NCBI RefSeq assembly: GCF_902713615.1
Contig: NC_052158.1
Span: forward strand, 20,456,546-20,520,545
Direction of reading: 5' to 3'
Source: Scyliorhinus canicula
Taxonomy: Eukaryota
Length of the DNA stretch: 64,000 bases
The notes beneath the pieces are model-generated. The model was not told where the DNA came from and did not search any database. It saw only the letters and a program-made list of their open reading frames with translations. Made by a program: the position numbers and the translations under genes. Positions 9,903 to 35,927 of this stretch are shown in pieces. The stretch's first letter is position 1. Each line of letters starts with the position of its first letter.

Positions 9903-10250
9903 GGGCGCCACGGTGGCACAGTGGTTTGCAGCACTGCCTCACAGCTTCAGGGTCCAGGGTTCAATTAGGCCTCGGTTGACTGTCTGTGTGGAGTCTGCAT
10001 GTTCTCCCCGTGTCTGCATGTTCTCCCCGTGTCTCCGTCGGTTTCCGCCTGGTGCTCTGGTTTCGTCCCACAGTCCAAAGATGTGCAGGTGAGGCGGATT
10101 GGCCATGATAAATTGCCGCTTAGTGTCCAAAAGGTTAGATGGGTTACGGGGACAGCGTGGAGACATGAGCTTAAGTCGGGAGCTCTTTCCAAGGGTCGGT
10201 GTAGACTCGATGGGCTGAATGGCTTCCCTGTGCACTGTAAATTATATGAC
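9903..10250 (+). mobile_element. HE1-like SINE with CR1 tail
   Basis: tRNA head, conserved body, CR1 tail. Confidence 0.8.
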
Positions 10251-10584
10251 ATGGACCAAATGAACAAGTGATTCCAGGATGTAGGCTGAACGTGAGGGCC
10301 GACATTCTGCATCCTGCCCACCACAGGAATGGGTGCGGACAAGATGGAAAATTTGATGGAGCAGCAAAAGCTCCATGACTTCTGCCGGGTGTTTCCATTG
10401 GGCAAGGACCGGAAAATCTGGAGGTGATTCCCAGGTTGTAAGATGGACGGAGTAGAGAGAATCACAGAATGCTTGCAGCACAAAAGGAGGCAATTTATCC
10501 CGATGTGACTCCGCAGGAACAACTCAGTTAGTCCCCACTCCCCCATAAAACCATAGAATTCCTACAGTGCAGAAGGAGGCCATT

Positions 10585-11226
10585 CATAAGAACATAAGAA
10601 CTAGGAGCAGGAGTAGGCCATCTGGCCCCTCGAGCCTGCTCCGCCATTCAATGAGATTATGGCTGATCTTTTGTGGACTCAGCTCCACTTTCCGGCCCGA
10701 ACACCATAACCCTTAATCCCTTTATTCTTCAAAAAACTATCTATCTTTACCTTAAAAACATTTAATGAAGGAGCCTCAACTGCTTCACTGGGCTGGGCAA
10801 GGAATTCCATAGATTCACAACCCTTTGGGTGAAGAAGTTCCTCCTAAACTCAGTCCTAAATCTACTTCCCCTTGTTTTGAGTCTATGCCCCCTAGTTCTG
10901 CTTTCACCCGCCAGTGGAAACAACCTGCCCACATCTATCCTATCTATTCCCTTCATAATTTTATGTTTCTATAAGATCCCCCCTCATCCTTCTAAATTCC
11001 AACGAGTACAGTCCCAGTCTACTCAACCTCTCCTCATAATCCAACCCCTTCAGCTCTGGGATTAACCTAGTGAATCTCCTCTGCACACCCTTCAGTGCCA
11101 GTACGTTCTTTCTTAAGTAAGGAGACCAAGACTGAACACAATTCCAGGTGTGGCCTCACTAACACCTTATACAATTGCAGCATAACCTCCCTAGTCTTAA
11201 ACTCTATCCCTCTGGCAATGAAGGAC
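10585..11226 (-). mobile_element. CR1 LINE 3' part (target of the Gypsy insertion)
   Basis: GIEFKTREVMLQLYKVLVRPHLE, RRNFFTQRVVNLWNSLP, TTCTTATG-type tail. Confidence 0.92.
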
Positions 11227-11512
11227 TGATGTACCATCAATTGAACGCGAAACGAGTTGCTGGACAAAAGTATGGCTTTAATCTGCTAGATGTTAGCCCT
11301 GCGGTCGATTACAGTATAAGGACGACCGCCGGGAGTACTGGGTATTTATACCCCGCCCTGGAGGCAGGGTTAACTCAGCCTCTCGAACAATCGGGGAGCC
11401 GTCACATGACTGGTCTCAACCAAACAGTCGAGAGGCACATGACCGACCAGGGCCAATGGCAAGTCGGTGTTCTGCACCAATGGCAGGCAGCTATGCTAAT
11501 CATACCACCACA
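11227..11512 (-). repeat. 3' LTR of Gypsy element
   Basis: Direct repeat of 14999-15284, preceded on the minus strand by polypurine tract AAGGGGTGAA (11522-11513). Confidence 0.97.
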
Positions 11513-11709
11513 TTCACCCCTTGCGGAGAAAGAAACGGGGGGGGGGGGGAGTCGTCAACGAGAGCTGTGGGGGGGGGGGGGGGGGGGAGAACTGGTGGTA
11601 TGAATAGTAAGGAGAGAAGGAAAAAAAAATGTATCCTTGGCTTCCCACTGGCCCAGATATTTAACAACAGTACATAGTGTCCATTCAAGGTCCATGGTGG
11701 TGTTGAAAG

Positions 11710-13050
11710 TTAAATGGACTCGATCAGACTTTTCGTCGCCCATGACGTCCTGGCAGACCGCCGCAGTGGAGTTGGTGATGTTGGTTCAGCCGATGGTGGT
11801 GGTTCAGCTGATGTCCTGGACTCCGGGAGCGATGGATCTTGAACTGTCTCCGTAACCCGGGCTGGTGGGGGAGACGCCATGGATGGGAGAGGGGTAGCCT
11901 GGGTGGGTCGCTGGGGGAAAAGGGACGGGGGGGGGGGTCTGTGGTGAAGGGGGGGGGGGGGGGAGGGCCGCACGCCGGCGGGTGCCAGGTCCCGGAGGGA
12001 GACCGTGTCCTGCCGACTGTCGGGGTACTCCACGTACGCATACTGCGGGTTAGCGTGGAGTAACTGGACTTGTTCCACCAACGGGTCAGACTTGTGCACC
12101 CGCACATGCTTCCGGAGCAAGATGGGTCCGGGGGCGGCCAGCCACGTCGGGAGAGGGGATCCGGAGGACGACTTCCTGGGGAAAACAAGAAGACGTTCAT
12201 GAGGTGTCTGATTAGTTGTGGTACAGAGGAGTGAGCGGATAGAATGTAGGGCATCGGGGATAACCTCTTGCCATCGGGAAATAGGGAGATCTCTGGACCG
12301 GAGGGCCAGTAGGATCGTCTTCCAGATGGTACCGTTCTCCCGCTCGACCTGTCCGTTACCCCGGGGGTTATAGCTGGTCGTCCTGCTAGAGGCAATGCCC
12401 CTGCTGAGCAGGAATTGACGCAGCTCGTCGCTCATAAAGGAGGACCCCCGATCGCTGTGCATGTACGCGGGGTAGCCGAACAGGGAGAAGATGGAGAGGA
12501 GGGCTTTGATGATGGTCAATGTGGTCATGTCGGGGTAGGGAATGGTGAAGGGGAAGCGGGAGTATTCATCGATCACCGTCAGGAAGTAAATGTTGCGGTT
12601 GCTAGAGGGAAGGGGCCCCTTGAAGTCAATGCTGAGACGTTCGAAGGGGCGGGATGCTTTGATCAGGTGTGCGCGCTCGGGGCGGTAGAAGTGCGGTTTG
12701 CACTCTGCGCAGATGTGGCAGTCACGGGTTACTGTCCTGACTTCCTCGATGGAGAAGGGCAGGTTGCGGGTCTTTATGAAATGATAGAAACGGGTCACCC
12801 CTGGATGGCAGAGGTCCGCGTGGAGGAAGCGGAGGCGGTCTATCTGCGCGCTGGCGCAGGTACCACGGGACAGGGCATCAGGAGGCTCATTGAACTTCCC
12901 AGGACGATACAAGATATCGTAGTTGTACGTGGACAACTCGATCTGCCACTGCAAGACCTTGTCGTTCTTAATCTTGCCCCTCTGTGCATTATCGAACATG
13001 AAGGCCACTGACCGTTGGTCTGTGAGGAGGGTAAAATTCCTGCTGGCCAA
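11710..13050 (-). pseudogene. Gypsy pol C-terminus: end of RNase H + uninterrupted integrase
   Basis: HADLCHPG...CHICAEC zinc finger, SIDFKGP, HSDRG, QVERE with D-x35-E spacing. Confidence 0.93.
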
Positions 13051-13745
13051 ATAGTGCCTCCAATGTCACACCGCTTCGACTATTGCCAGGGCTTCCTTTT
13101 CCACAGAGGGGTGGCGGAGTTCGGAAGCCTGGAGGGTTCTGAGGAAGGCCACGGGTCTGCCCGCTTGGTTCAGGGTGGCCGCCAGAGCTACTTCTGATGC
13201 ATTGCTCTTGACCTGGAAAGGGAGGGACTCGTCGATGGCGCGCATCGTGGCCTTTGCGATGTCCGCTTTGATGCGGCTAAAGGCCTGGCAGGCCTCTGAT
13301 GACGACGGGAAGGTCGTGGACTGAATGAGGGGACGGGCCTTGTTGGTGTAATTGGGAACCCATTGGATTTAGGAAGCGAAGAAACCCAGGCAGCGTTTAA
13401 GGGACTTGAGGGTATTGGGGAGAGGGAGTTCCATCAGGGGGCGCATGCGTTCGGGGTCGGGGCCTATCACTCCGTTACGCACTACGTAACTGAGGATGGC
13501 TAGACGGTCGGTGCTAAACACACACTTATCCTTATTGTAAGTTATGTTTAAGGGGTTTTGCAGTTTGGAGGAATTTTCGGAGGTTGGTGTCATGGTCTTG
13601 CTGGTCGTGGCCGCAGATGGTGACATTATCGAGGTACGGGAAGGTAGCCCGTAATCCGTACTTGTCGACCATTCGGTCCATCTCCCGTTGGAAGACCGAG
13701 ACCCCATTTGTGACACAGAATGGAACCCTGAGGAAGTGGTAGAGG
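13051..13745 (-). pseudogene. Gypsy RT C-terminal half + RNase H remnant
   Basis: HFLRVPFCVTNGVSVFQREMDRM, TFPYLDNVTICG, SLKRCLGFF, VEKEALAIVEAV; stops and frameshifts present. Confidence 0.9.
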
Positions 13746-13759
13746 AGAAGATCCATCGT

Positions 13760-14980
13760 CGTCGTCGGCCGTGTAGGTGCTGGCAGGACCTTGTGTGCCA
13801 GTCCAGGATGGCGGCGCCCAGGATCCGCACGTGGAGTCGGGGCACAAAGATGGCGGCGCCCAGGACCTGCATGTGGAGTCGGGGCCCCAAGATGGCGGCG
13901 CCCAGGACCCGCACATGGAGTCAGGGCACCAAGATGGCGGCGCCCAGGACCCGCACATGGAGTCGGGGCCCCAAGATGGTGGCGCCCAGGACCCGCACGT
14001 GGCATCCGGGGCCCAAGATGGCGGCGCCCGTAGGACCCTCGTGGTTGCTTGGGGCGGGGTTAGCGGTGCCAGCGGGCCGAACGGAGCGGCTGAGAGCGGG
14101 GGCAGAGAGGCGCGCAGGCCGGGCACAGGGGCCCGGGGGAGATTGGCGCGGTGCGCTGGAAGGTCACGGAGGAGGAGATCCCTGGTCGCTGGGCGGCACA
14201 GCAGCGACCGATTTGGCCTGGCAGACCGACGAAAAATGGCCCTTCTTCCCGCAGCTCTTACAAAGGGCGGAGCGGGCCGGGCAGCGCGGGCGAGGGTGTT
14301 TGGCGAACCCACAGAAATAGCAGCAGGGCCCCGCGGACTTGTCGGGGCGTCCCGCGGCGCAGGCCTGAGGGGGGTCGGGAGCAACGGATGGCGGTGGGGA
14401 AGCGTGCCAGGAGGCCCAGGGCGCTGCAGTGCGGCTGGGGACATAGGCGCGGGCGTTTAAGTCAGCGACCTCCAGGGAGGCGGAGAGAGTCCGTGCCTCA
14501 GTTAGGCTGAGGTCGTCTTTTTCCAGCATCCGCTGGTGGATAGCGGCGGACTGCATCCCAGCCACAAAAGCATCTCTGATCAAAAGTTCCCTGTGCTCAG
14601 TGGCTGAAACTTGGAGGCAGGCGCAATGCCTCCCCAGGACAGCGAGGGCCCGGTAGAAATCGTCTTAAGGACTCACCGGGGAACTGTTGTCTGGCAGCCA
14701 GCAGATGTTGTGCGAACACTCGGTTTACCGGCTTAAGAAACTGTCCTTTTAGCTTATCCATGGCCGCGTCGTATTCCTTTTCTTCCCCTATCATCGCATA
14801 GGCTGCCATGCCCATGCTGGAATGGAGAATATGAAGCTTCTGTGCCATGGTGGGGGGGCTGCTTGCGGTCGCCAGGTAGCTATCGAAACACGCCAGCCAA
14901 TGCTTGAAGATTTCCGATGCATTCGGAGTTTGCGGGCTGATGCGGAGGCATTCGGGCTTGATCCGGAGCTCCATCATCAA
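13760..14980 (-). pseudogene. Gypsy gag remnant
   Basis: MELRIKPECLRISP..., MIRDAFVAG, CYFCGFAKHPRPRC and CKSCGKKGHFSSVC knuckles; frameshifted. Confidence 0.85.
13804..14029. repeat. 42-bp tandem repeat (5 units plus a partial) within gag tail
   Basis: Unit AAGATGGCGGCGCCCAGGACCCGCACATGGAGTCGGGGCCCC at period 42; encodes SWAPPSWGPDSMCG on minus strand. Confidence 0.95.
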
Positions 14981-17590: not shown

Positions 17591-17719
17591 TCATCTGCAA
17601 TCTTCTTTCTGTGCAAAAGCGTATATGGTCTCTTCAGGTCTCTCAGGTATGTTATGTGCTGGTCTAGGCCCAGACCACTGTAGCATGGAATATGTGAGCT
17701 CACCGTTCGATATAGATTC
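17591..17719 (-). CDS. Exon 5: terminal cytoplasmic exon with ITIM and ITSM-like motif
   Basis: Acceptor cttttctgttccgtgcag|G, phase 0; ESISNGELTYSMLQWSGPRPAHNIPERPEETIYAFAQKEDCR, TGA at 17593-17591. Confidence 0.85.
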   Translation of the reverse strand, partial: ESISNGELTYSMLQWSGPRPAHNIPERPEETIYAFAQKEDCR

Positions 17720-20700
17720 CTGCACGGAACAGAAAAGACCAGCTTACTGAAGGTGAAAAATAAAAATTAACAGAGAAAGCAAACTATTGAAAATACACAA
17801 AAGATCAGTCAGGAAGAACATAGAAACGAGCAGAAGTAGGCAATTCAGCCCTTCGAGCCTGCTCCGCCATTCAATCAGATCATAGCTGATCTCGACCTCG
17901 TCCCAAATCCACCTCTCTACATGTTGCCCATTTCCCTTTAACCCGTTTTTTAAAATCAGAAATATATCATCTCCCTCTTGGAACCATTTAATGAGTCGGA
18001 CTCCACCGCACAATTGGGCAGCGAGTTCCATGAAGAATGAGAGATCTCTTTTGAAATTCATGTTTCCTTTTCTCAGGGACTCTGATGTGTAAAACTTTCC
18101 AACAAGCAGGTGAAAAATTGCTCAGCTTTTGATGGTCCATGCCTGTGAGGAACACGTGGAACAACACAAGGCCATTCGGCCCTGAGCCTGCTCTGCTGTT
18201 CAATAAGTTCATGGCTAATCAGCACTTCATTTACTTTTCTCCATATCTCTCTTCCACATCAAAGACCTCTCCATAAAAACAGAAAACTCTGGAAAATCTC
18301 AGCAGGTCTGGCAGCATGTGTGGAGTGCGGAAAAGAGTTAACGAGGGCGATTCTCTGAGCCCCGCGCCAGGCCGGAGAATCGGCGCAACCGCGCCACGGC
18401 ACCCCGACGCCGGCGCGCGATTCTCTAAGGTGCGGAGAATCGGCAGCATCTGCACTGGCGCATTTGGCACAGCGCCGGCCATGGGCTGCTGGAATCGGCA
18501 GGGCCGCCGATACTCTCGCCCGGATGGGCCACGCCGGTACGACAGAGTCCCGCTGGTGCCATTCACCCTTGGTCGCTGCCGGCAGGCACTTTGCGCGAAC
18601 GGTCGGGGGGGGGGGGTTTGGCCTGTGGGGGGGGGGGGGGGGGGGGTGCTCCTTCACTGGTGGGGCCTCCGATGGGGTCTGGCCCACGATCGGGGCCCAC
18701 CAATTGGCGGGCCGGCCTCTCTCCTCCCCCCCCCTCCCCCCCCCCTCCCCCCCGGGCCTACTTTCTGGCGCGGCTGGCCCCTGAATACCGACTCCATGTT
18801 GAGTTGGGACCGGCGCGCATGCGCAGGTTGGCACGCCGCCAAATGGGCGCCACGAAAGGAGGCTGGAGCGGCGTCAACCTGTGGGGGCCTGAATCGGTCG
18901 TACCCCGGCCCGACTCACGCCGTTGTGAAACATGACAGCGTTCACGACGGCGCAAACACTTGGGCTCCATATTGGAGAATCGCCCCCAACGTTTTGAGTC
19001 CATATGCCTGACCTTCTGATCTCTCCACCTCAGTTTGGAAAACTCCAATGCATTTCAGCATCCTGTTTCATGCTGATTTTGGTTGAGGAAAATATTGATC
19101 AGGTGTAGTGTCCTAAAAAGTAAGGTTAAGGGGGGGGTTGTTGGGTTACGGGTATAGGGTGGATATGTGGGTTTGAGTAGGGTGATCATTGCTCGGCACA
19201 ACATCGAGGGCTGAAGGGCCTGTTCTATGCTGTACTGTTCTATGTTCTATGTCACTGGGTAGAACTCCCCAGCTATTTCTCAAAAATAGTGCTGTACTAA
19301 AACAGTTTAACTGCTCATTGTCAGATTGTTTAACTGTTGGAGTGCGCTTTGCATGAATTGGCTGTCAAGTTTCGTTCATTACAACAGAGAATATACTTCA
19401 AATGCTATAACACAAAGAATATCAGCAAATGGCAGTGGGAATTACAAGCTCAATCAATCGATAGGGATCAGTTAACAGGTACATTTGTTACTCCCACACT
19501 TTCTGTCAGAGCAAAGACAGTAGAGCAACTGCCTGGCAAAGTTTCTGTGATAAGATGGTGCAGTAAAGTCCAAAGATGTGCAGGTTAGGTGGATTGGCCA
19601 TGTTAAATTGCCCCTTAGTATCCAAAGGTTAGGGTTACGCAGATAGGGCAGAGATTGGACCTGGTAGGGTGCTCTTTCGGAAGGTCGGTGCAGCCTCGAT
19701 GGGCCGAATGCCTCCATTTGTACTGTTGGGATTCTATGAAAGTCTTTCTTCCACCTCCAAACCTAACAGTCTTTGAACAACCATAATATACTGCTGACAG
19801 CAGATGTGCCGGGAATCAAGTGATCTGAGATTGGTGATGGTTTCTTTCAGAGAAATGGAAAGTCTAAGGTGAAGCAGAGATCAGTCTTTACCAGCACCAT
19901 TTTCCAGGTCAATTTGGATTCATTCCAAAATTAATTTATTATTGATTTTTAAATAGCTTCCTTACTTCATTATTTCTTTTAAACGTAATTCCACTGCACA
20001 CCCATGTCTCCCAATAGTGTCACTTAGAATCACTGGCCCAGTAAACCAGAGACTCTGGCTAAAAATCTACAGGCCCTGGTTTGAACCCTATCACACCAGT
20101 TGGTGGAATTTACTTTAATTTATTCATAAATTATTAAACAATCCTTTGTTCTCTGTCTCAGAGAAATAGACGGTTGTGATATTAAGAAATCAGCACCTTC
20201 ATGAGGAAAGTGTATAAAATTGGGACAGGTAAAACAAGGTTTTCCAAAATTAATAAACTGTGATGTGTCAGGTCGAAGGCTCTCTGTGAAAGAGCAACAA
20301 TTTACAAAATTTACGTTGCCTATTTTTTTTTGTTTGCAAGAATCTTGAACTCACAATAACGCAGCCCCTTCTTACCTCAGTCAGGACTTGCCCCGTCCCT
20401 CCAACAGGCTGAACAGCTATTTCCGTGAGGTCTGAATCGTGTTGTCGCTGGCAACCTGAATTAAAACATTCAGACAGGAACAGGATTGCTTGTGTCATAT
20501 GTGAAAGATTAAATGTAAAGCTATTTAAACCACGATAGAAAGACAGCCGGAAGACCTTGTTAATACTTCTTATTTGGCCACCGCAAGCTCCAATTTTGTA
20601 TTTAGTAATCCAATTTATTTTGATTCCTTCACCATGGTGGGCATTTCCTGAGAAACCTGACCAGTTAATAACAAACACCAAAAATCCCTAATCCTTGAGT

Positions 20701-32700: not shown

Positions 32701-35700
32701 CTACTTGGAAGAGTCGGAGGATGTCTCGGCACTGTAGCGCTCCCTCAATACTGAAGCATGTCCAGATATTGTGATTAGAATCCTGAGTGAATGGGCTGCA
32801 GACTGGCACAATCCAAGGTCCAGGACCATGTGCTGAGGGACGCACCAAATCTTTGGGGCAGTTGCCACAGAGGCCCAATGTGGAATAGTCTCTGTTTAAG
32901 ACCTTTCAGCTATCATGCACTGGGGCTGGATAATTTGTAGAACCCCACAGGCCTGACATGGAGTGTACACTGTAATTATGGAGGGTGTGGAAATTATACA
33001 GCTCAGAATGCAACCTGTCTTATGGATAAAAGGTCAATCCCATTGCACTTCCTGTAATTTTTCAGTTTGAAATGTTTTGCCCTCAAAGCCTGATAGTGAA
33101 CATATATTGTAAATATAAAGAGTATTGCAGTTGTATTGGGCAGCACGGTAGCATTGTGGATAGCACAAATGCTTCACAGCTCCAGGGTCCCAGGTTCGAT
33201 TCCGGCTTGGGTCACTGTCTGTGCGGAATCTGCACATCCTCCCTGTGTCTGCGTGGGTTTCCTCCGGGTGCTCCGGTTTCCTCCCACAGTCCAAAGATGT
33301 GCAGGTTAGGTGGATTGGCCATGACAAATTGCCCTTAGTGTCCAAAATTGATCTTAGTGTTCAAAATTGCCCTTAGTGTTGGGTGGGGTTACTGGATTAT
33401 GGGGATAGGGTGGAGGTGTTGACCTTGGGTAGGGTGCTCTTTCCAAGAGCCGGTGCAGACTCGATGGGCCGAATGGCCTCCTTCTGCGCTGTAAATTGTG
33501 TGTGTGTGTATTGAGGGAACAGCTGAATATGCTGCTTGGAGACAAGATGAATTTACAGCACTTTTCTGCAATTTTCAAGTGTAAATGCTTTGTACTTTCT
33601 ATAATCCATTTAAGGATGGCTTTACAGTCCCGGCCAACATTTATTACTCACTCATTGAATGCTATGTATAAAGTATACTTTTGGGGAAAAAAATCCTGGG
33701 TTGTGGAGGAGAGACCCATGCAAACACGGGGAGAATGTGCAAATTCCACACGGACAGTGACCCGGGTCCAGGATTGAAGCCAAGACCTCAGAGCCGTAGG
33801 CAGCTAAACATTGGGCTATCATGACATCCTTCTGAGAGGGTCCAGTTAATTCATTTCTAAACCCAGCTACAGTCGTGGGTCCAGATAATTCGATATTAAA
33901 TCCCAGCTACAGTCAGAGGGTCCAGTTAATTCAATATTAAATCCCAGCTACAGTCAGAGGGTCTAGGTAATTCAATATTAAATCCCAGCTACAGTCAGAG
34001 GGTCGAGTTAATTCAATATTAAATCCTAGCTACAGTCGTGGGTCCAGTTAATTCAATATTAAATCCCAGCTACAGTCAGAGGGTCCAGTTAATTCAATAT
34101 TAAATCCCAGCTACAGTCGGAGGGTCCAGTTAATTCAATATTAAATCCCAGCTACAGTCAGAGGTCCAGTTTATTCATTATTAAATTCCATCGACAATTA
34201 AAGCGTCCAGTTAATTCAATATATATATATTTAATTTTAGAATACCAAATTATTTTTTTCCCAATTAAGCAGCAATTTAATGTGGCCAATCCACCTACCC
34301 TGCACGTCTTTGGGTTGTGGAGATGAAACCCACGCAGACACGGGGAGAATGTGCAAACTCCACACGGACAGTGACCCAGGCCGGGATTCGTTCCCGGGTC
34401 CTCAGCGCCGCAGTCCCAGTGCTAACCACTGCACCGCATGCCACCCTCAGTTAATTCAATAGTAAACCCCAGCTACAGTTAGAGGGTCCAGTTAATTCAA
34501 TATTAAATCCCAGCTACAGTTAGAAGGTCCAGTTAATTCAATATTCAATATTAATCCCAGCTACAGTTAGAGGGTCCAGTTAATTCAATATTAAATCCCA
34601 GCTACAGTTAGAGGGTCCAGTTAATTCAATATTAATCCCAGCTACAGTTAGAGGGTCCAGTTAATTCAATATTAAATCCCAGCTACAGTTAGAAGGTCCA
34701 GTTAATTCAATATTCAATATTAATCCCAGCTACAGTTAGAGGGTCCAGTTAATTCAATATTAAATCCCAGCTACAGTTAGAAGGTCCAGTTAATTCAATA
34801 TTCAATATTAATCCCAGCTACAGTTAGAGGGTCCAGTTAATTCAATATTAAATCCCAGCTGCAGTCAGAGGGTCCAGTTAATTCAATATTAAATCCCAGC
34901 TACAGTTAGAGGGTCCAGTTAATTCAATATTAATCCCAGCTACAGTCAGAGGTCCAGTTTATTCATTATTAAATTCCATCGACAATTAAAGCGTCCAGTT
35001 AATTCAATATATATATTTTTAAATTTAGAATACCCAATTATTCTTTTTCCCAATTAAGCGGCAATTTAATGTGGCCAATCCACCTACCCTGCACGTCTTT
35101 GAGTTGTGGAGGTGAAACCCACGCAGACACGGGGAGAATGCACAAACTCCACACAGACGGTGACCCAGAGCCGGGATTCGTACCCGGGTCCTCAGTGCCG
35201 CAGTCCCAGTGCTAACCACTGCACCGCATGCCACCCTCAGTTAATTCAATATTAAAATCCCAGCTGCAGTCAGAGGGTCCAGTTAATTCAATATTAAATC
35301 CCAGCTACAGTTAGAGGGTCCAGTTAATTCAATATTAAATCCCAGCTACAGTCAGAGGGTCCAGTTAATTCAATATTAATCCCAGCTACAGTCAGAGGGT
35401 CCAGTTAATTCAACATTAAACCCAGCTACAGTCAGAGGGTCCAGTTAATTCAATAGTAAATCCCAGCTACAGTCAGAGGGTCCAATTAATTCAATAGTAA
35501 ATCCCAGCTAGTCAGAGGGCCCAGTTAATTCAATATTAAACCCCAGCTAGTCAGAGGGTCCAGTTAATTCAATATTAAACCCCAGACGTTCAATTAATTA
35601 ATTACAAAATCTCATCTACATGTTACTGATCCATGTAAAGAGTGTGGAGCTGGAAGCTGAAGGCAGAAAGTGATGGGGAATCTCCCTGTTCACTGTTTAA

Positions 35701-35927
35701 ATGGCAATGAAAGATCTGAAGAATTAGCCGAGTTACATTCAGTGTAAATCGGCGAGGGATGGAAGACCAACTTCGATCAAAACACTCACACTGACCGGGA
35801 ACTCAGAAATAGAATTACTGCTGATCAGAGATGTGCAAAAATAAGAGAACTTACCGAAGAGGAAAATGAAGCAACAGGTGAGCAGGAAAACATTGGTGGG
35901 TTGGAAGTGATCTTTTTTCCTGCACAT
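17591..35927 (-). CDS. Single-IgV type I membrane receptor (HEPACAM/CEACAM/SLAM-like V domain) with cytoplasmic ITIM + ITSM-like motifs; 5 coding exons, 275 aa
   Basis: Exons of 73+393+153+80+129 = 828 nt join in frame via GT-AG introns (phases 1,1,1,0). Predicted protein: MCRKKDHFQPTNVFLLTCCFIFLFA-SGIGVTVRVHQ...VTLTVYNKT-DSETTSP...SIGVSVSAAVCFLIILICAYLMM-TKKYTGCQRQ...QVLTE-ESISNGELTYSMLQWSGPRPAHNIPERPEETIYAFAQKEDCR*. Confidence 0.85.
18343..18987. mobile_element. Harbinger-type MITE
   Basis: GAGGGCGATTCTCT / GGAGAATCGCCCCC, AAC TSD; removal restores host repeat ...agagtt-aac-gttttgagtcc. Confidence 0.87.
20376..20455 (-). CDS. Exon 4: membrane-proximal cytoplasmic segment
   Basis: Acceptor ttttaattcag|G, donor GAG|GTAAGA, 80 nt phase 1-0; GCQRQHDSDLTEIAVQPVGGTGQVLTE. 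Confidence 0.8.
21181..21475 (+). mobile_element. HE1-like SINE with CR1 tail (intron 3)
   Basis: As above. Confidence 0.8.
21652..22358 (+). mobile_element. L1-clade LINE 3' fragment with poly(A)
   Basis: WTAFFEAMSKVVG...ARRRILFGWRSAAPP...HRTWEPF, AATAAA and A-tail; homologous to 53565-54890. Confidence 0.85.
22576..22801 (-). mobile_element. HE1-like SINE (short subfamily)
   Basis: 15-bp TSD CCCAACCTTTCTCTC. Confidence 0.9.
23111..23335 (+). mobile_element. HE1-like SINE (short subfamily)
   Basis: 16-bp TSD TAACTGTGAGCAATAG. Confidence 0.9.
23579..23731 (-). CDS. Exon 3: Ser/Thr-rich stalk + transmembrane helix
   Basis: Acceptor ttttgttccag|, donor CAG|GTATGT, 153 nt phase 1-1; DSETTSPSISVSPQTRATSITEK-SIGVSVSAAVCFLIILICAYLMM-TKKYT. 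Confidence 0.88.
25057..25178. mobile_element. Short Harbinger-type MITE
   Basis: GGGCTGGATTCTCC / AGAGAATCCCGCTG. Confidence 0.65.
25850..26130 (+). mobile_element. HE1-like SINE with CR1 tail
   Basis: Conserved body and tail. Confidence 0.75.
26899..27291 (-). CDS. Exon 2: Ig V-set domain
   Basis: Acceptor ...tgttgttgcag|C, donor ACAG|GTAAGA, symmetric phase 1-1, open 393 nt; motifs GTVDQSVLLPVSYS, IQW, YRDRVHLYPENGSLLLWDLQPSDSGVY, NVTLTV resemble the HEPACAM/CEACAM N-domain. Confidence 0.93.
27822..29199. mobile_element. Harbinger-type MITE carrying a nested MITE
   Basis: GGGGCGGATTCTCC / AGAGAATCCGCCCA; related to 39890-40727 in opposite orientation. Confidence 0.8.
28673..29171. mobile_element. 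Nested Harbinger-type MITE
   Basis: GGGCGGTATTCTTCC / GAGAAAATCCCGCCC, TTA TSD. Confidence 0.82.
29528..29832 (+). mobile_element. HE1-like SINE, degenerate
   Basis: Head, body and tail recognisable. Confidence 0.7.
30259..30597 (-). mobile_element. HE1-like SINE with CR1 tail
   Basis: Near-consensus copy. Confidence 0.88.
31240..31512 (+). mobile_element. HE1-like SINE, degenerate
   Basis: Head, body and tail recognisable. Confidence 0.7.
32236..32419. mobile_element. Short Harbinger-type MITE
   Basis: GGATTGGATTCTCT / AGAGAATCTAGTCC. Confidence 0.65.
33139..33497 (+). mobile_element. HE1-like SINE with CR1 tail
   Basis: Near-consensus; internal 18-bp unit triplicated. Confidence 0.88.
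34222..34447 (-). mobile_element. HE1-like SINE inside minisatellite (copy 1)
   Basis: 14-bp TSD CAGTTAATTCAATA derived from the satellite unit. Confidence 0.9.
35010..35237 (-). mobile_element. HE1-like SINE inside minisatellite (copy 2)
   Basis: Same flanks as copy 1, offset about 788 bp. Confidence 0.9.
35855..35927 (-). CDS. Exon 1: signal peptide (MCRKKDHFQPTNVFLLTCCFIFLF + 1 nt)
   Basis: ATG at 35927, basic N-region then hydrophobic core, donor G|GTAAGT at 35854; phase 1 matches exon 2. Confidence 0.8.

What the first reader, a model, noticed from the sequence alone, without database searches (positions are those of the whole stretch)
17591..35927. Complete, probably unnamed shark inhibitory single-IgV receptor hidden among repeats
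Seen: five minus-strand exons with canonical splice sites join in frame into a 275-aa signal-IgV-stalk-TM-cytoplasmic protein. Exons 1, 3 and 5 are not read in the correct frame by the ORF track. Knowledge: the layout (signal / IgV / stalk+TM / short tail exon / ITIM+ITSM exon) matches the PD-1 gene, but the V domain lacks the CD28-family cysteines and resembles HEPACAM/CEACAM/CD2-SLAM N-domains. Inference: a cartilaginous-fish inhibitory receptor, either a distinct lineage or convergent on PD-1/CD300a-type architecture.
Basis: partly seen in the sequence, partly recalled or inferred. Interest (0 to 1): 0.85.

Follow-up and report, generated by a model that had tools for sequence, protein, structure and literature searches.

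The report
Catshark inhibitory single-IgV paired receptor gene
The five exons are real and encode an inhibitory-type immune receptor of the small-spotted catshark that databases already predict but nobody has named; it belongs to an old, undescribed family in which "brake" and "accelerator" receptors keep near-identical outer domains.

Summary
Five minus-strand exons with AG/GT borders join into a 275-aa protein: signal, IgV, stalk and TM, then a tail with a canonical ITIM. RNA contigs cover the exons and not the unique intron sequence. They show the e2-e3 junction and, through an exact overhang, the e3-e4 junction. The e1 region is fully held in RNA runs.

The window is Scyliorhinus canicula. 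The gene is already RefSeq "uncharacterized protein LOC119975690". So the gene is unnamed, but it is not undiscovered.

Orthologues with the same architecture occur in at least 12 shark and ray genera. The family also has partners with an arginine in the TM and a short tail, one of them in the catshark with a 92% identical V domain. V domains group by species while the activating-type TM is conserved from shark to skate. That is the pattern of a paired-receptor family under concerted evolution.

It is not PD-1, which exists separately in the catshark. The nearest named mammalian V domains are VSTM5, HEPACAM and HEPACAM2 at 25-30% identity. CEACAM membership is not established. The second tyrosine motif (TIYAFA) is conserved but is not a canonical ITSM.

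The most likely function is ITIM-dependent recruitment of SHP phosphatases. The ligand is unknown.

The parts
35855..35927 (-). Exon 1: start codon (MCRKK...) and signal peptide, 73 nt, donor GT at 35854-35853. RefSeq instead starts at an in-frame ATG at 36023-36021, which adds 32 aa.
   Evidence: Sequence. N-terminus is homologous in Mustelus, Carcharodon, Heterodontus and S. torazame. Identical in RefSeq isoform X3. Region held at share 1.0 in RNA runs.
26899..27291 (-). Exon 2: IgV domain, 393 nt, phase 1 on both sides. No B- or F-strand cysteine. Two cysteines in NCS sequons between strands C' and D. Six N-glycosylation sequons.
   Evidence: Pfam V-set at 2.1e-9. AF2 model with pLDDT 89.9. 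RNA coverage and the joint to e3.
23579..23731 (-). Exon 3: Ser/Thr-rich stalk, transmembrane helix (about 23660-23595, no charged residue) and KKYT stop-transfer, 153 nt. Skipped in RefSeq isoform X3.
   Evidence: RNA contigs with 0-1 differences and joints on both sides.
20376..20455 (-). Exon 4: 80-nt membrane-proximal cytoplasmic exon (GCQRQHDSDLTEIAVQPVGGTGQVLTE).
   Evidence: The only 80-nt AG..GT candidate with a good acceptor and donor. Exact match to the RNA overhang beyond e3. Conserved in orthologues.
17591..17719 (-). Exon 5 coding part including the stop. ITIM LTYSML at 17698-17681. Second tyrosine motif TIYAFA at 17629-17612, 23 residues after the first tyrosine. The 3' UTR continues below 17591.
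   Evidence: Identical in RefSeq isoforms X2 and X3. Motifs conserved across sharks and rays.

Best explanation
This is the ITIM-bearing (inhibitory) member of an unnamed family of paired single-IgV receptors in Scyliorhinus canicula, annotated in RefSeq as LOC119975690.

The mature protein is a type I membrane glycoprotein. It has one V domain without the canonical intradomain disulfide, a Ser/Thr stalk, an uncharged TM helix and a 75-residue tail.

Inferred mechanism: ligand engagement brings the receptor close to Src-family kinases, which phosphorylate the tyrosine of the conserved [LIV]xYxx[LI] motif. The phospho-ITIM, probably together with the second conserved tyrosine 23-30 residues downstream, docks the tandem SH2 domains of SHP-1 or SHP-2. 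That dampens activation signals.

Partner genes encode an almost identical V domain on a TM helix with an arginine and a short tail. These would pair with an acidic-TM ITAM adaptor of the FcR-gamma or DAP12 type and signal the opposite way.

Shown here: the gene structure, transcription, two junctions, conservation of the motifs, the existence of the charged-TM partners, and species-wise clustering of V domains. Inferred: phosphorylation, SHP recruitment, adaptor pairing, expression on immune cells, and the ligand.
For: A canonical ITIM is conserved in the shark orthologues and in several ray sequences; Pristis and Rhinoraja carry a T at pY-2 instead. The second tyrosine motif lies near the C-terminus, and the two-motif cassette is duplicated in Mobula and Rhinoraja.

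Arg-TM, short-tail members are P0002 (S. canicula, V domain 92.3% identical to the window's), P0008, P0166 and P0018.

In the V-domain tree, activating-type V domains sit with the inhibitory V of the same species or genus. The label needs 5 changes for 5 rows, all forced by well-supported branches, and 0 of 200 bootstrap trees give a single origin. The activating-type TM pattern (LR...G..[TA]V[LF]G..L) is shared by catshark, bamboo sharks and skate. The window's V is closer to the same-species activating partner (92.3%) than to the S. torazame orthologue (88.5%).
Against: No functional data exist. The tissue of expression is unknown, because the runs are coded. The second motif has A, P or S at pY+3, so it fits neither the ITIM nor the ITSM consensus.

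The tail of the S. canicula activating partner (P0002) looks like a read-through prediction. Its Arg-TM is clear, but the true C-terminus is uncertain.

Most RNA contigs over exon 2 carry paralogue or allele letters. For example, codon 47 of exon 2 reads D or G in all four runs and never the reference F. Expression of exactly this V exon is therefore shown only indirectly, through the unique exon 1.

HEPACAM-like V domains also serve plain adhesion.
Confidence: 0.68

Rival explanations
1. It is a cartilaginous-fish member of the CEACAM family (CEACAM1-like). That would mean a disulfide-less N domain, an ITIM and ITSM-like tail, and paired decoy or activating relatives, evolving under pathogen pressure as described for mammals and Xenopus.
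For: The V domain lacks the B-F disulfide, as CEACAM N domains do. CEACAM N domains are among the PDB profile hits at 26-32 bits. NCBI names several relatives 'CEACAM3-like' or 'CEACAM5-like'. The literature reports CEACAM homologues in cartilaginous fish and notes that Xenopus group-1 N domains are about 35% identical to fish ones (PMC5112662; PMC3628338). From memory, the tail layout (ITIM, then about 25 residues, then an IIYxxxKK-like C-terminus) recalls CEACAM1-L.
Against: Single-domain scores to CEACAM are no better than those to CAR, CD48, SLAMF5 or SCN4B. No CEACAM is among the top 30 Swiss-Prot fold hits, whereas VSTM5, HEPACAM and HEPACAM2 lead. The gene has no IgC exon.

Bird relatives are abundant in ducks and fowl, where a dedicated study found no intact CEACAM gene between LIPE and BCL3 (PMC13278318). 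The X. tropicalis relative lies on a 147.2-Mb chromosome, while the curated ceacam cluster is on chromosome 7. My assignment of 147.2 Mb to chromosome 8 is from memory.
Confidence: 0.15
2. It is a divergent orthologue or co-orthologue of the VSTM5/HEPACAM group. Its main role would be homophilic or heterophilic cell adhesion, with the tyrosine motifs serving endocytosis or trafficking rather than immune inhibition.
For: The top Swiss-Prot fold hits are VSTM5 (E 2e-9, 25-26% identity), HEPACAM (29-30%) and HEPACAM2 (27-28%). VSTM5 is again the best named cluster in AFDB. Automatic names such as 'HEPACAM-like', 'HEPACAM family member 2-like' and 'HECAM' are given to several family members. YSML is also a YxxPhi sorting signal.
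Against: There is no C2 domain and no long HEPACAM-type tail. Identity is only 25-30%. The ITIM is strictly conserved, Arg-TM partners exist and V exons are homogenised within species. Those are hallmarks of immune paired receptors, not of adhesion molecules.
Confidence: 0.12
3. The locus is one constant unit (TM and ITIM exons) served by alternative leader+V cassettes up to about 112 kb upstream. V-domain diversity would then be produced by promoter or exon choice, and not only by separate genes.
For: RefSeq isoform X2 (P0153) joins a different V exon (about 92-94% identical to e2, not present in the window) to e3-e5, which are identical to the window. Its gene range is 130.9 kb against 18.4 kb for the proximal form. 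An X3 RNA contig joins a V variant with R>G, the same residue as in P0153, to 610 nt of downstream sequence. Another X3 contig carries an upstream exon that is absent from the window.
Against: Isoform X2 has no signal peptide and a truncated V start, which looks like a read-through or chimeric Gnomon model. The RNA contigs could equally come from a near-identical paralogue or from another haplotype.
Confidence: 0.2

Closest known systems
PD-1 (PDCD1)
   Same: Five-exon layout: leader, IgV, stalk+TM, a short cytoplasmic exon, and a last exon with two tyrosine motifs about 25 residues apart. Single IgV type I receptor of about 280 aa.
   Different: PD-1 has the canonical C54/W67/C123 V-domain core and the tail consensus (I/V)(D/E)YG(E/V)L ... 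(T/V)EYATI. A separate PD-1 gene is described in S. canicula (PMC12151841). This protein lacks both core cysteines and has LTYSML ... TIYAFA.
CEACAM1 with CEACAM3 (paired CEACAM receptors)
   Same: N-type V domain without the B-F disulfide. An ITIM-bearing member paired with activating or decoy members that have near-identical N domains. Within-species homogenisation of N exons (PMC5112662, PMC2832619).
   Different: No IgC exons. The activating partner uses a charged TM instead of a cytoplasmic ITAM-like motif. Sequence and fold searches do not single out CEACAM. Locus synteny was not shown, and indirect evidence from bird and frog relatives argues against it.
VSTM5, HEPACAM and HEPACAM2
   Same: The best-matching named V domains: Foldseek E 2e-9 to 5e-8, 25-30% identity. 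VSTM5 is also a single-V type I protein.
   Different: HEPACAM and HEPACAM2 have a V plus a C2 domain and long tails. None of the three is known as an ITIM/charged-TM paired receptor (from my own knowledge). Identity is too low for orthology to be assumed.
KIR, LILR, SIRP, CD300 and NITR type paired Ig receptors
   Same: The same operating logic: an ITIM long-tail form and a basic-TM short-tail form share an ectodomain, occur as multiple genes and undergo gene conversion.
   Different: The Ig domains are unrelated in type (C2 or I-set, or canonical-disulfide V). No sequence membership.

Membership tests
CD28/PD-1 family | IgV with the canonical B-strand and F-strand cysteines | tested here: not met
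   The B strand reads LLPVSY and the F strand reads GVYVISV. The same holds across all 36 aligned family members.
CD28/PD-1 family | One-to-one orthology with PD-1 | tested here: not met
   No PD-1 appears among the sequence or fold hits. A distinct catshark PD-1 is published (PMC12151841).
CEACAM | N domain of V type lacking the intradomain disulfide | tested here: met
CEACAM | N-domain sequence closest to CEACAM N domains | tested here: inconclusive
   The family profile scores isolated CEACAM N domains at 26-32 bits, the same range as CAR D1, CD48, SLAMF5 and SCN4B. No CEACAM is in the top 30 Swiss-Prot fold hits.
CEACAM | Location in the conserved locus (LIPE, BCL3, TOMM40, CD79A neighbourhood) | not testable with these tools
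   The window holds no other gene. The catshark chromosome could not be fetched. Indirect evidence: relatives are present in Galloanserae, where the CEACAM locus is reported empty.
HEPACAM family | Ectodomain of one V and one C2 domain with a long cytoplasmic tail | tested here: not met
   There is only one Ig exon between the leader and TM exons, and no other Ig exon in the window.
HEPACAM family / VSTM5 | V domain most similar to this group | tested here: met
   Foldseek against Swiss-Prot ranks VSTM5, HEPACAM and HEPACAM2 at positions 1-9 with 25-30% identity. VSTM5 is rank 2 in the AFDB clusters.
CD2/SLAM family | V-C2 ectodomain and cytoplasmic ITSM TxYxx[VI] | tested here: not met
   There is no C2 exon. 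TIYAFA has A at pY+3, and orthologues have A, P or S there.
ITIM-bearing inhibitory receptors (functional class) | Cytoplasmic [SILV]xYxx[ILV] conserved among orthologues | tested here: met
   LTYSML in the window. LTYSFL, LVYSLL, LTYCLI, VTYSYL, ITYTLL and ITYCLL in other genera.
Paired activating/inhibitory receptors (functional class) | A same-species partner with a highly similar ectodomain, a charged TM residue and no ITIM | tested here: met
   P0002 (S. canicula LOC119976513) has a V domain 92.3% identical, the TM AALLLRGSIVGG... and no ITIM. The same pairing is seen in Hemiscyllium and Chiloscyllium.
Paired activating/inhibitory receptors (functional class) | Association of the charged-TM form with an ITAM adaptor, and SHP recruitment by the ITIM form | not testable with these tools
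   Needs biochemistry.

The most novel reading that the evidence does not exclude
LOC119975690 and its Arg-TM partners represent an undescribed paired-receptor family that predates the shark-batoid split. Its V exons are kept alike within each species by gene conversion while the inhibitory and activating TM/tail modules stay distinct. It would be a cartilaginous-fish counterpart of the KIR or CEACAM type of pathogen-driven receptor pair. Relatives occur in amphibians, turtles and birds, and no clear mammalian member was found. In addition, the catshark locus may feed alternative V cassettes into one ITIM module.
Probability: 0.45. Interest if true: 0.6.

Novelty: new member of a known kind. 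Interest (0 to 1): 0.5.

Why it matters
Few germline-encoded paired Ig receptors are known from cartilaginous fish, the oldest lineage with adaptive immunity. This family offers three things. It is conserved and easy to recognise, with an ITIM form and an Arg-TM form. It shows within-species homogenisation of the ligand-binding exon. It has relatives in several vertebrate classes that currently carry misleading automatic names (HEPACAM-like, CEACAM3-like, A33-like).

That gives comparative immunologists a concrete entry point for asking when paired inhibitory/activating recognition arose and which ligands or pathogens drive it in sharks.

The work does not reveal a new principle. The gene itself is already predicted in RefSeq.

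Tried and rejected
- **Second read-laying run.** The e4-e5 junction therefore has no direct RNA evidence here.
- **Alternative upstream exon.** The 26-nt upstream exon seen in one X3 contig was searched in the window with up to 3 mismatches and as 14-16-mers. It was not found. It belongs to a paralogue or to an exon outside the window.
- **Catshark chromosome DNA.** DNA around LOC119975690 and LOC119976513 could not be fetched because the file or the gene range was too large. I therefore have no distance or orientation between the pair and no synteny.
- **Chicken isoform.** The chicken LOC771657 isoform was not on record for context.
- **Auk locus.** The Alca torda locus shows only further family members and a V+Ig_3 gene within 10 kb.
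- **ESM Atlas.** The feature search gave only generic single-V receptors such as TIGIT-like and MPZL1.
- **Other ORFs in the window.** Pfam on them found only a retroelement integrase.
- **PD-1 identity.** Rejected, because the V-domain cysteines are absent and a separate PD-1 is published.
- **Canonical ITSM reading of TIYAFA.** Rejected, because of the residue at pY+3.
- **Additional family exons in the window.** tblastn with activating-type and distant family members found none.
- **Literature.** A search for the LOC identifiers returned nothing.
Full report
**Observation**

The minus strand between 35927 and 17591 carries five open segments bounded by canonical AG and GT dinucleotides:
- e1: 35927-35855
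- e2: 27291-26899
- e3: 23731-23579
- e4: 20455-20376
- e5: 17719-17591, including the stop

The first three introns are phase 1 and the last is phase 0. The joined CDS is 828 nt and translates without a stop into 275 aa. Among the 80-nt in-frame AG..GT candidates between e3 and e5, only 20455-20376 combines a pyrimidine-rich acceptor with a GTAAG donor.

Translated e2 matches Pfam V-set (E 2.1e-9, above the curated cut-off). With a 36-sequence family alignment it folds into a confident Ig V domain (pLDDT 89.9, pTM 0.84). A tblastn of the model against the whole window finds no second copy of any exon.

**Transcript evidence**

I laid contigs of three RNA-type runs (X1-X3), and of one run that also covers introns (X15), on 23520-29500. 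X1-X3 have depth on e2 and e3. Apart from repeat spikes, they have none on unique intron sequence.

X15 has two contigs with a joint 23731->26899 whose skipped part begins CT and ends AC. On the gene's strand that is GT..AG, at exactly the predicted e2-e3 junction.

In X1 and X15 a 25-nt overhang beyond 23577 matches 20453-20429 with no mismatch. The two nucleotides between are ambiguous. This gives the e3-e4 junction.

Longer contigs continue past these exons: 610 nt beyond e2 in X3 and 1427 nt beyond e3 in X2. That is consistent with e4, e5 and a long 3' UTR.

The e1 region with 123 nt of upstream sequence is held at a word share of 1.00 in five RNA-type runs and at 0.87 in X2. The e1-e2 and e4-e5 junctions therefore rest on gene models and homology.

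**Identity of the gene**

An exhaustive HMMER search with the V domain found 263 relatives. A word-indexed search with names identified them.

P0156, [quoted passage not shown], is 100% identical to the model over e1, e2, e4 and e5. It starts at an in-frame ATG 96 nt upstream (36023) and skips e3.

The same gene has a 307-aa product spanning 18,433 bp, which equals 36023 to 17591.

So the window is the small-spotted catshark (assembly GCA_902713615.2), and the gene is already predicted, though it has no name.

Which ATG is used is open. The upstream ATG lies inside the transcribed region. Models in Mustelus, Carcharodon and Heterodontus start at the MC(R/W) methionine. After signal-peptide cleavage both forms would give the same mature protein.

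**Family**

Proteins with the same five-part architecture, collinear through all exons, are annotated in these genera:
- Sharks: Scyliorhinus torazame, Mustelus, Carcharodon, Cetorhinus, Heterodontus, Heptranchias, Hemiscyllium, Chiloscyllium (two species) and Stegostoma.
- Rays and skates: Mobula, Pristis, Rhinoraja, Amblyraja and Narcine.

Almost all are called "uncharacterized".

The first tail motif is [LIV]xYxx[LI] in the sharks and most rays. Pristis and Rhinoraja have T at pY-2. The second is [TIV][IV]Y[AST]x[APSV][QR]K, five to eight residues from the C-terminus. In Mobula and Rhinoraja the two-motif cassette is duplicated.

The first motif is a canonical ITIM. The second is conserved but has A, P or S at pY+3, so it meets neither the ITIM nor the ITSM consensus. 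The spacing of 23-30 residues is the one used by tandem-SH2 phosphatases on PD-1, as discussed in PMC12151841.

**Paired partners**

Several family members have the same V domain followed by a TM helix containing an arginine and a short tail without tyrosine motifs:
- P0002, S. canicula LOC119976513
- P0008, Hemiscyllium
- P0166, Chiloscyllium punctatum
- P0018, Leucoraja

Their TM segments align with each other across catshark, bamboo sharks and skate, in the pattern L-R-x-x-x-[VL]-G-x-[VL]-[TA]-V-[LF]-G-x-x-L. They differ from the inhibitory-type TM. The two modules are therefore old.

The V domains tell a different story. In a maximum-likelihood tree the activating-type V domains sit next to the inhibitory V of the same species or genus:
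- The three S. canicula V domains group together, apart from S. torazame, with support 98/91.
- C. punctatum inhibitory and activating V domains group together, apart from C. plagiosum, with support 100/93.
- The activating label needs five changes for five rows, all forced by supported branches, and no bootstrap tree gives a single origin.

Pairwise identities agree. The window's V is 92.3% identical to the same-species activating partner and 88.5% identical to the S. torazame orthologue. This is the signature of concerted evolution of the ligand-binding exon in paired receptors, as described for CEACAMs (PMC5112662, PMC2832619).

**A mixture of V exons in RNA**

The differences seen in RNA contigs over e2 are mostly non-synonymous: 12 of the 16 listed variant codon changes. 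Several reproduce residues of the paralogues: P65S, D112V, R114S or R114G, V104D and F47D. At codon 47 of the exon none of the four runs shows the reference F.

By contrast, e3 contigs differ at 0-1 positions. The RNA signal on e2 is therefore a blend of this gene, its paralogues and alleles. The expression of this particular gene rests on the unique e1.

RefSeq isoform X2 (P0153) joins a third V exon, absent from the window and about 112 kb upstream, to e3-e5. One X3 contig carries an upstream exon that is not in the window. I cannot decide whether these reflect alternative V cassettes, read-through transcripts or another haplotype.

**Comparison with known families**

- **PD-1.** Excluded. 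Both core cysteines are missing, PD-1 is not among the hits, and a separate catshark PD-1 is published.
- **PDB profile search.** The family profile gives no winner. Isolated CEACAM N domains, CAR D1, CD48, SLAMF5 and SCN4B all score 26-32 bits. The higher totals for pIgR, CD276 and JAML are sums over several domains.
- **Foldseek.** Against Swiss-Prot models it ranks VSTM5, HEPACAM and HEPACAM2 first (E 2e-9 to 5e-8, 25-30% identity), with no CEACAM in the top 30. VSTM5 is again the best named AFDB cluster.
- **More distant relatives.** They occur in chimaera, coelacanth, frogs and newts, turtles, many birds including ducks and fowl, and cyprinid fish as giant multi-V proteins. Their automatic names are mixed: HEPACAM-like, HEPACAM2-like, CEACAM3-like, CEACAM5-like and A33-like.
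- **CEACAM.** A dedicated study found no intact CEACAM gene in Galloanserae and places bird CEACAM1 between LIPE and BCL3 (PMC13278318). The Xenopus ceacam cluster is on chromosome 7, while the X. tropicalis relative found here lies on a 147.2-Mb chromosome. From memory that is chromosome 8. These points argue against CEACAM membership but are indirect. Catshark synteny could not be obtained.

I therefore file the gene as a member of an unnamed IgSF family with a HEPACAM/VSTM5-like V domain that works like a classical paired receptor.

**Mechanism and confidence**

The best-supported reading (about 0.68) is an inhibitory receptor. A phosphorylated ITIM, probably together with the second tyrosine, recruits SHP-type phosphatases. 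Arg-TM partners oppose it by signalling through an acidic-TM ITAM adaptor. The structure, the conservation and the pairing are shown here. The signalling steps, the cell type and the ligand are inferred.

**Novelty**

No paper in the searchable library mentions the locus identifiers. The shark-oriented literature I found covers PD-1, LAG-3/CD4 and a skate "CEA homologue" EST.

The kind of system is well known and the gene is already predicted. The new content is the recognition of the family, its paired organisation and the homogenisation of its V exon. I score interest at 0.5.

Noticed in passing
window 36028-36021: Two overlapping ATGs sit in the 5' leader. The first opens a 2-codon uORF (ATG CAA TGA). 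The second is the in-frame upstream start that RefSeq uses for the 307-aa form. S. torazame shares this 33-aa extension, with one in-frame indel.
   Followed up: partly
window 9965-14583: A retroelement remnant lies downstream of the gene. An ORF at 11713-13050 (-) has an integrase core domain (rve, 7.9e-19).
   Followed up: partly
window 25120-25519 and 25920-26119 (intron 2), with similar ORF fragments at about 22500-22770, 23090-23350, 29430-29750, 30400-30720, 31170-31390, 33030-33350, 34280-34460 and 35070-35215: Many copies, in both orientations, of one short interspersed repeat. Its recurring pseudo-ORF reads ...WPIHLTCTSL(D/G)CG(R/G)...THA.TGRMC.L.TDSDP. RNA-run contig depth there reaches 1e4-3e5, so the repeat is abundantly represented in transcriptomes.
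   Followed up: no
window 57000-60000: A block of extreme composition: GC 0.72, GC skew +0.83 and AT skew +0.55 at 58-60 kb. Long stop-free ORFs run in several frames on both strands. It is probably a G/A-rich simple or satellite repeat.
   Followed up: no
RefSeq isoform X3 (P0156) relative to window 23731-23579: A predicted isoform skips the 153-nt stalk/TM exon in frame. That would give a TM-less, presumably secreted V domain fused to the tail sequence.
   Followed up: no
L001 (Alca torda CM018082.1, 891316-915687): In the razorbill, an ITSM/ITIM-tailed family member (263 aa) and a short-tailed one (224 aa) with almost identical V domains lie 2.5 kb apart in the same orientation. They are followed by a V+Ig_3 gene. 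So the paired arrangement also exists in birds.
   Followed up: partly
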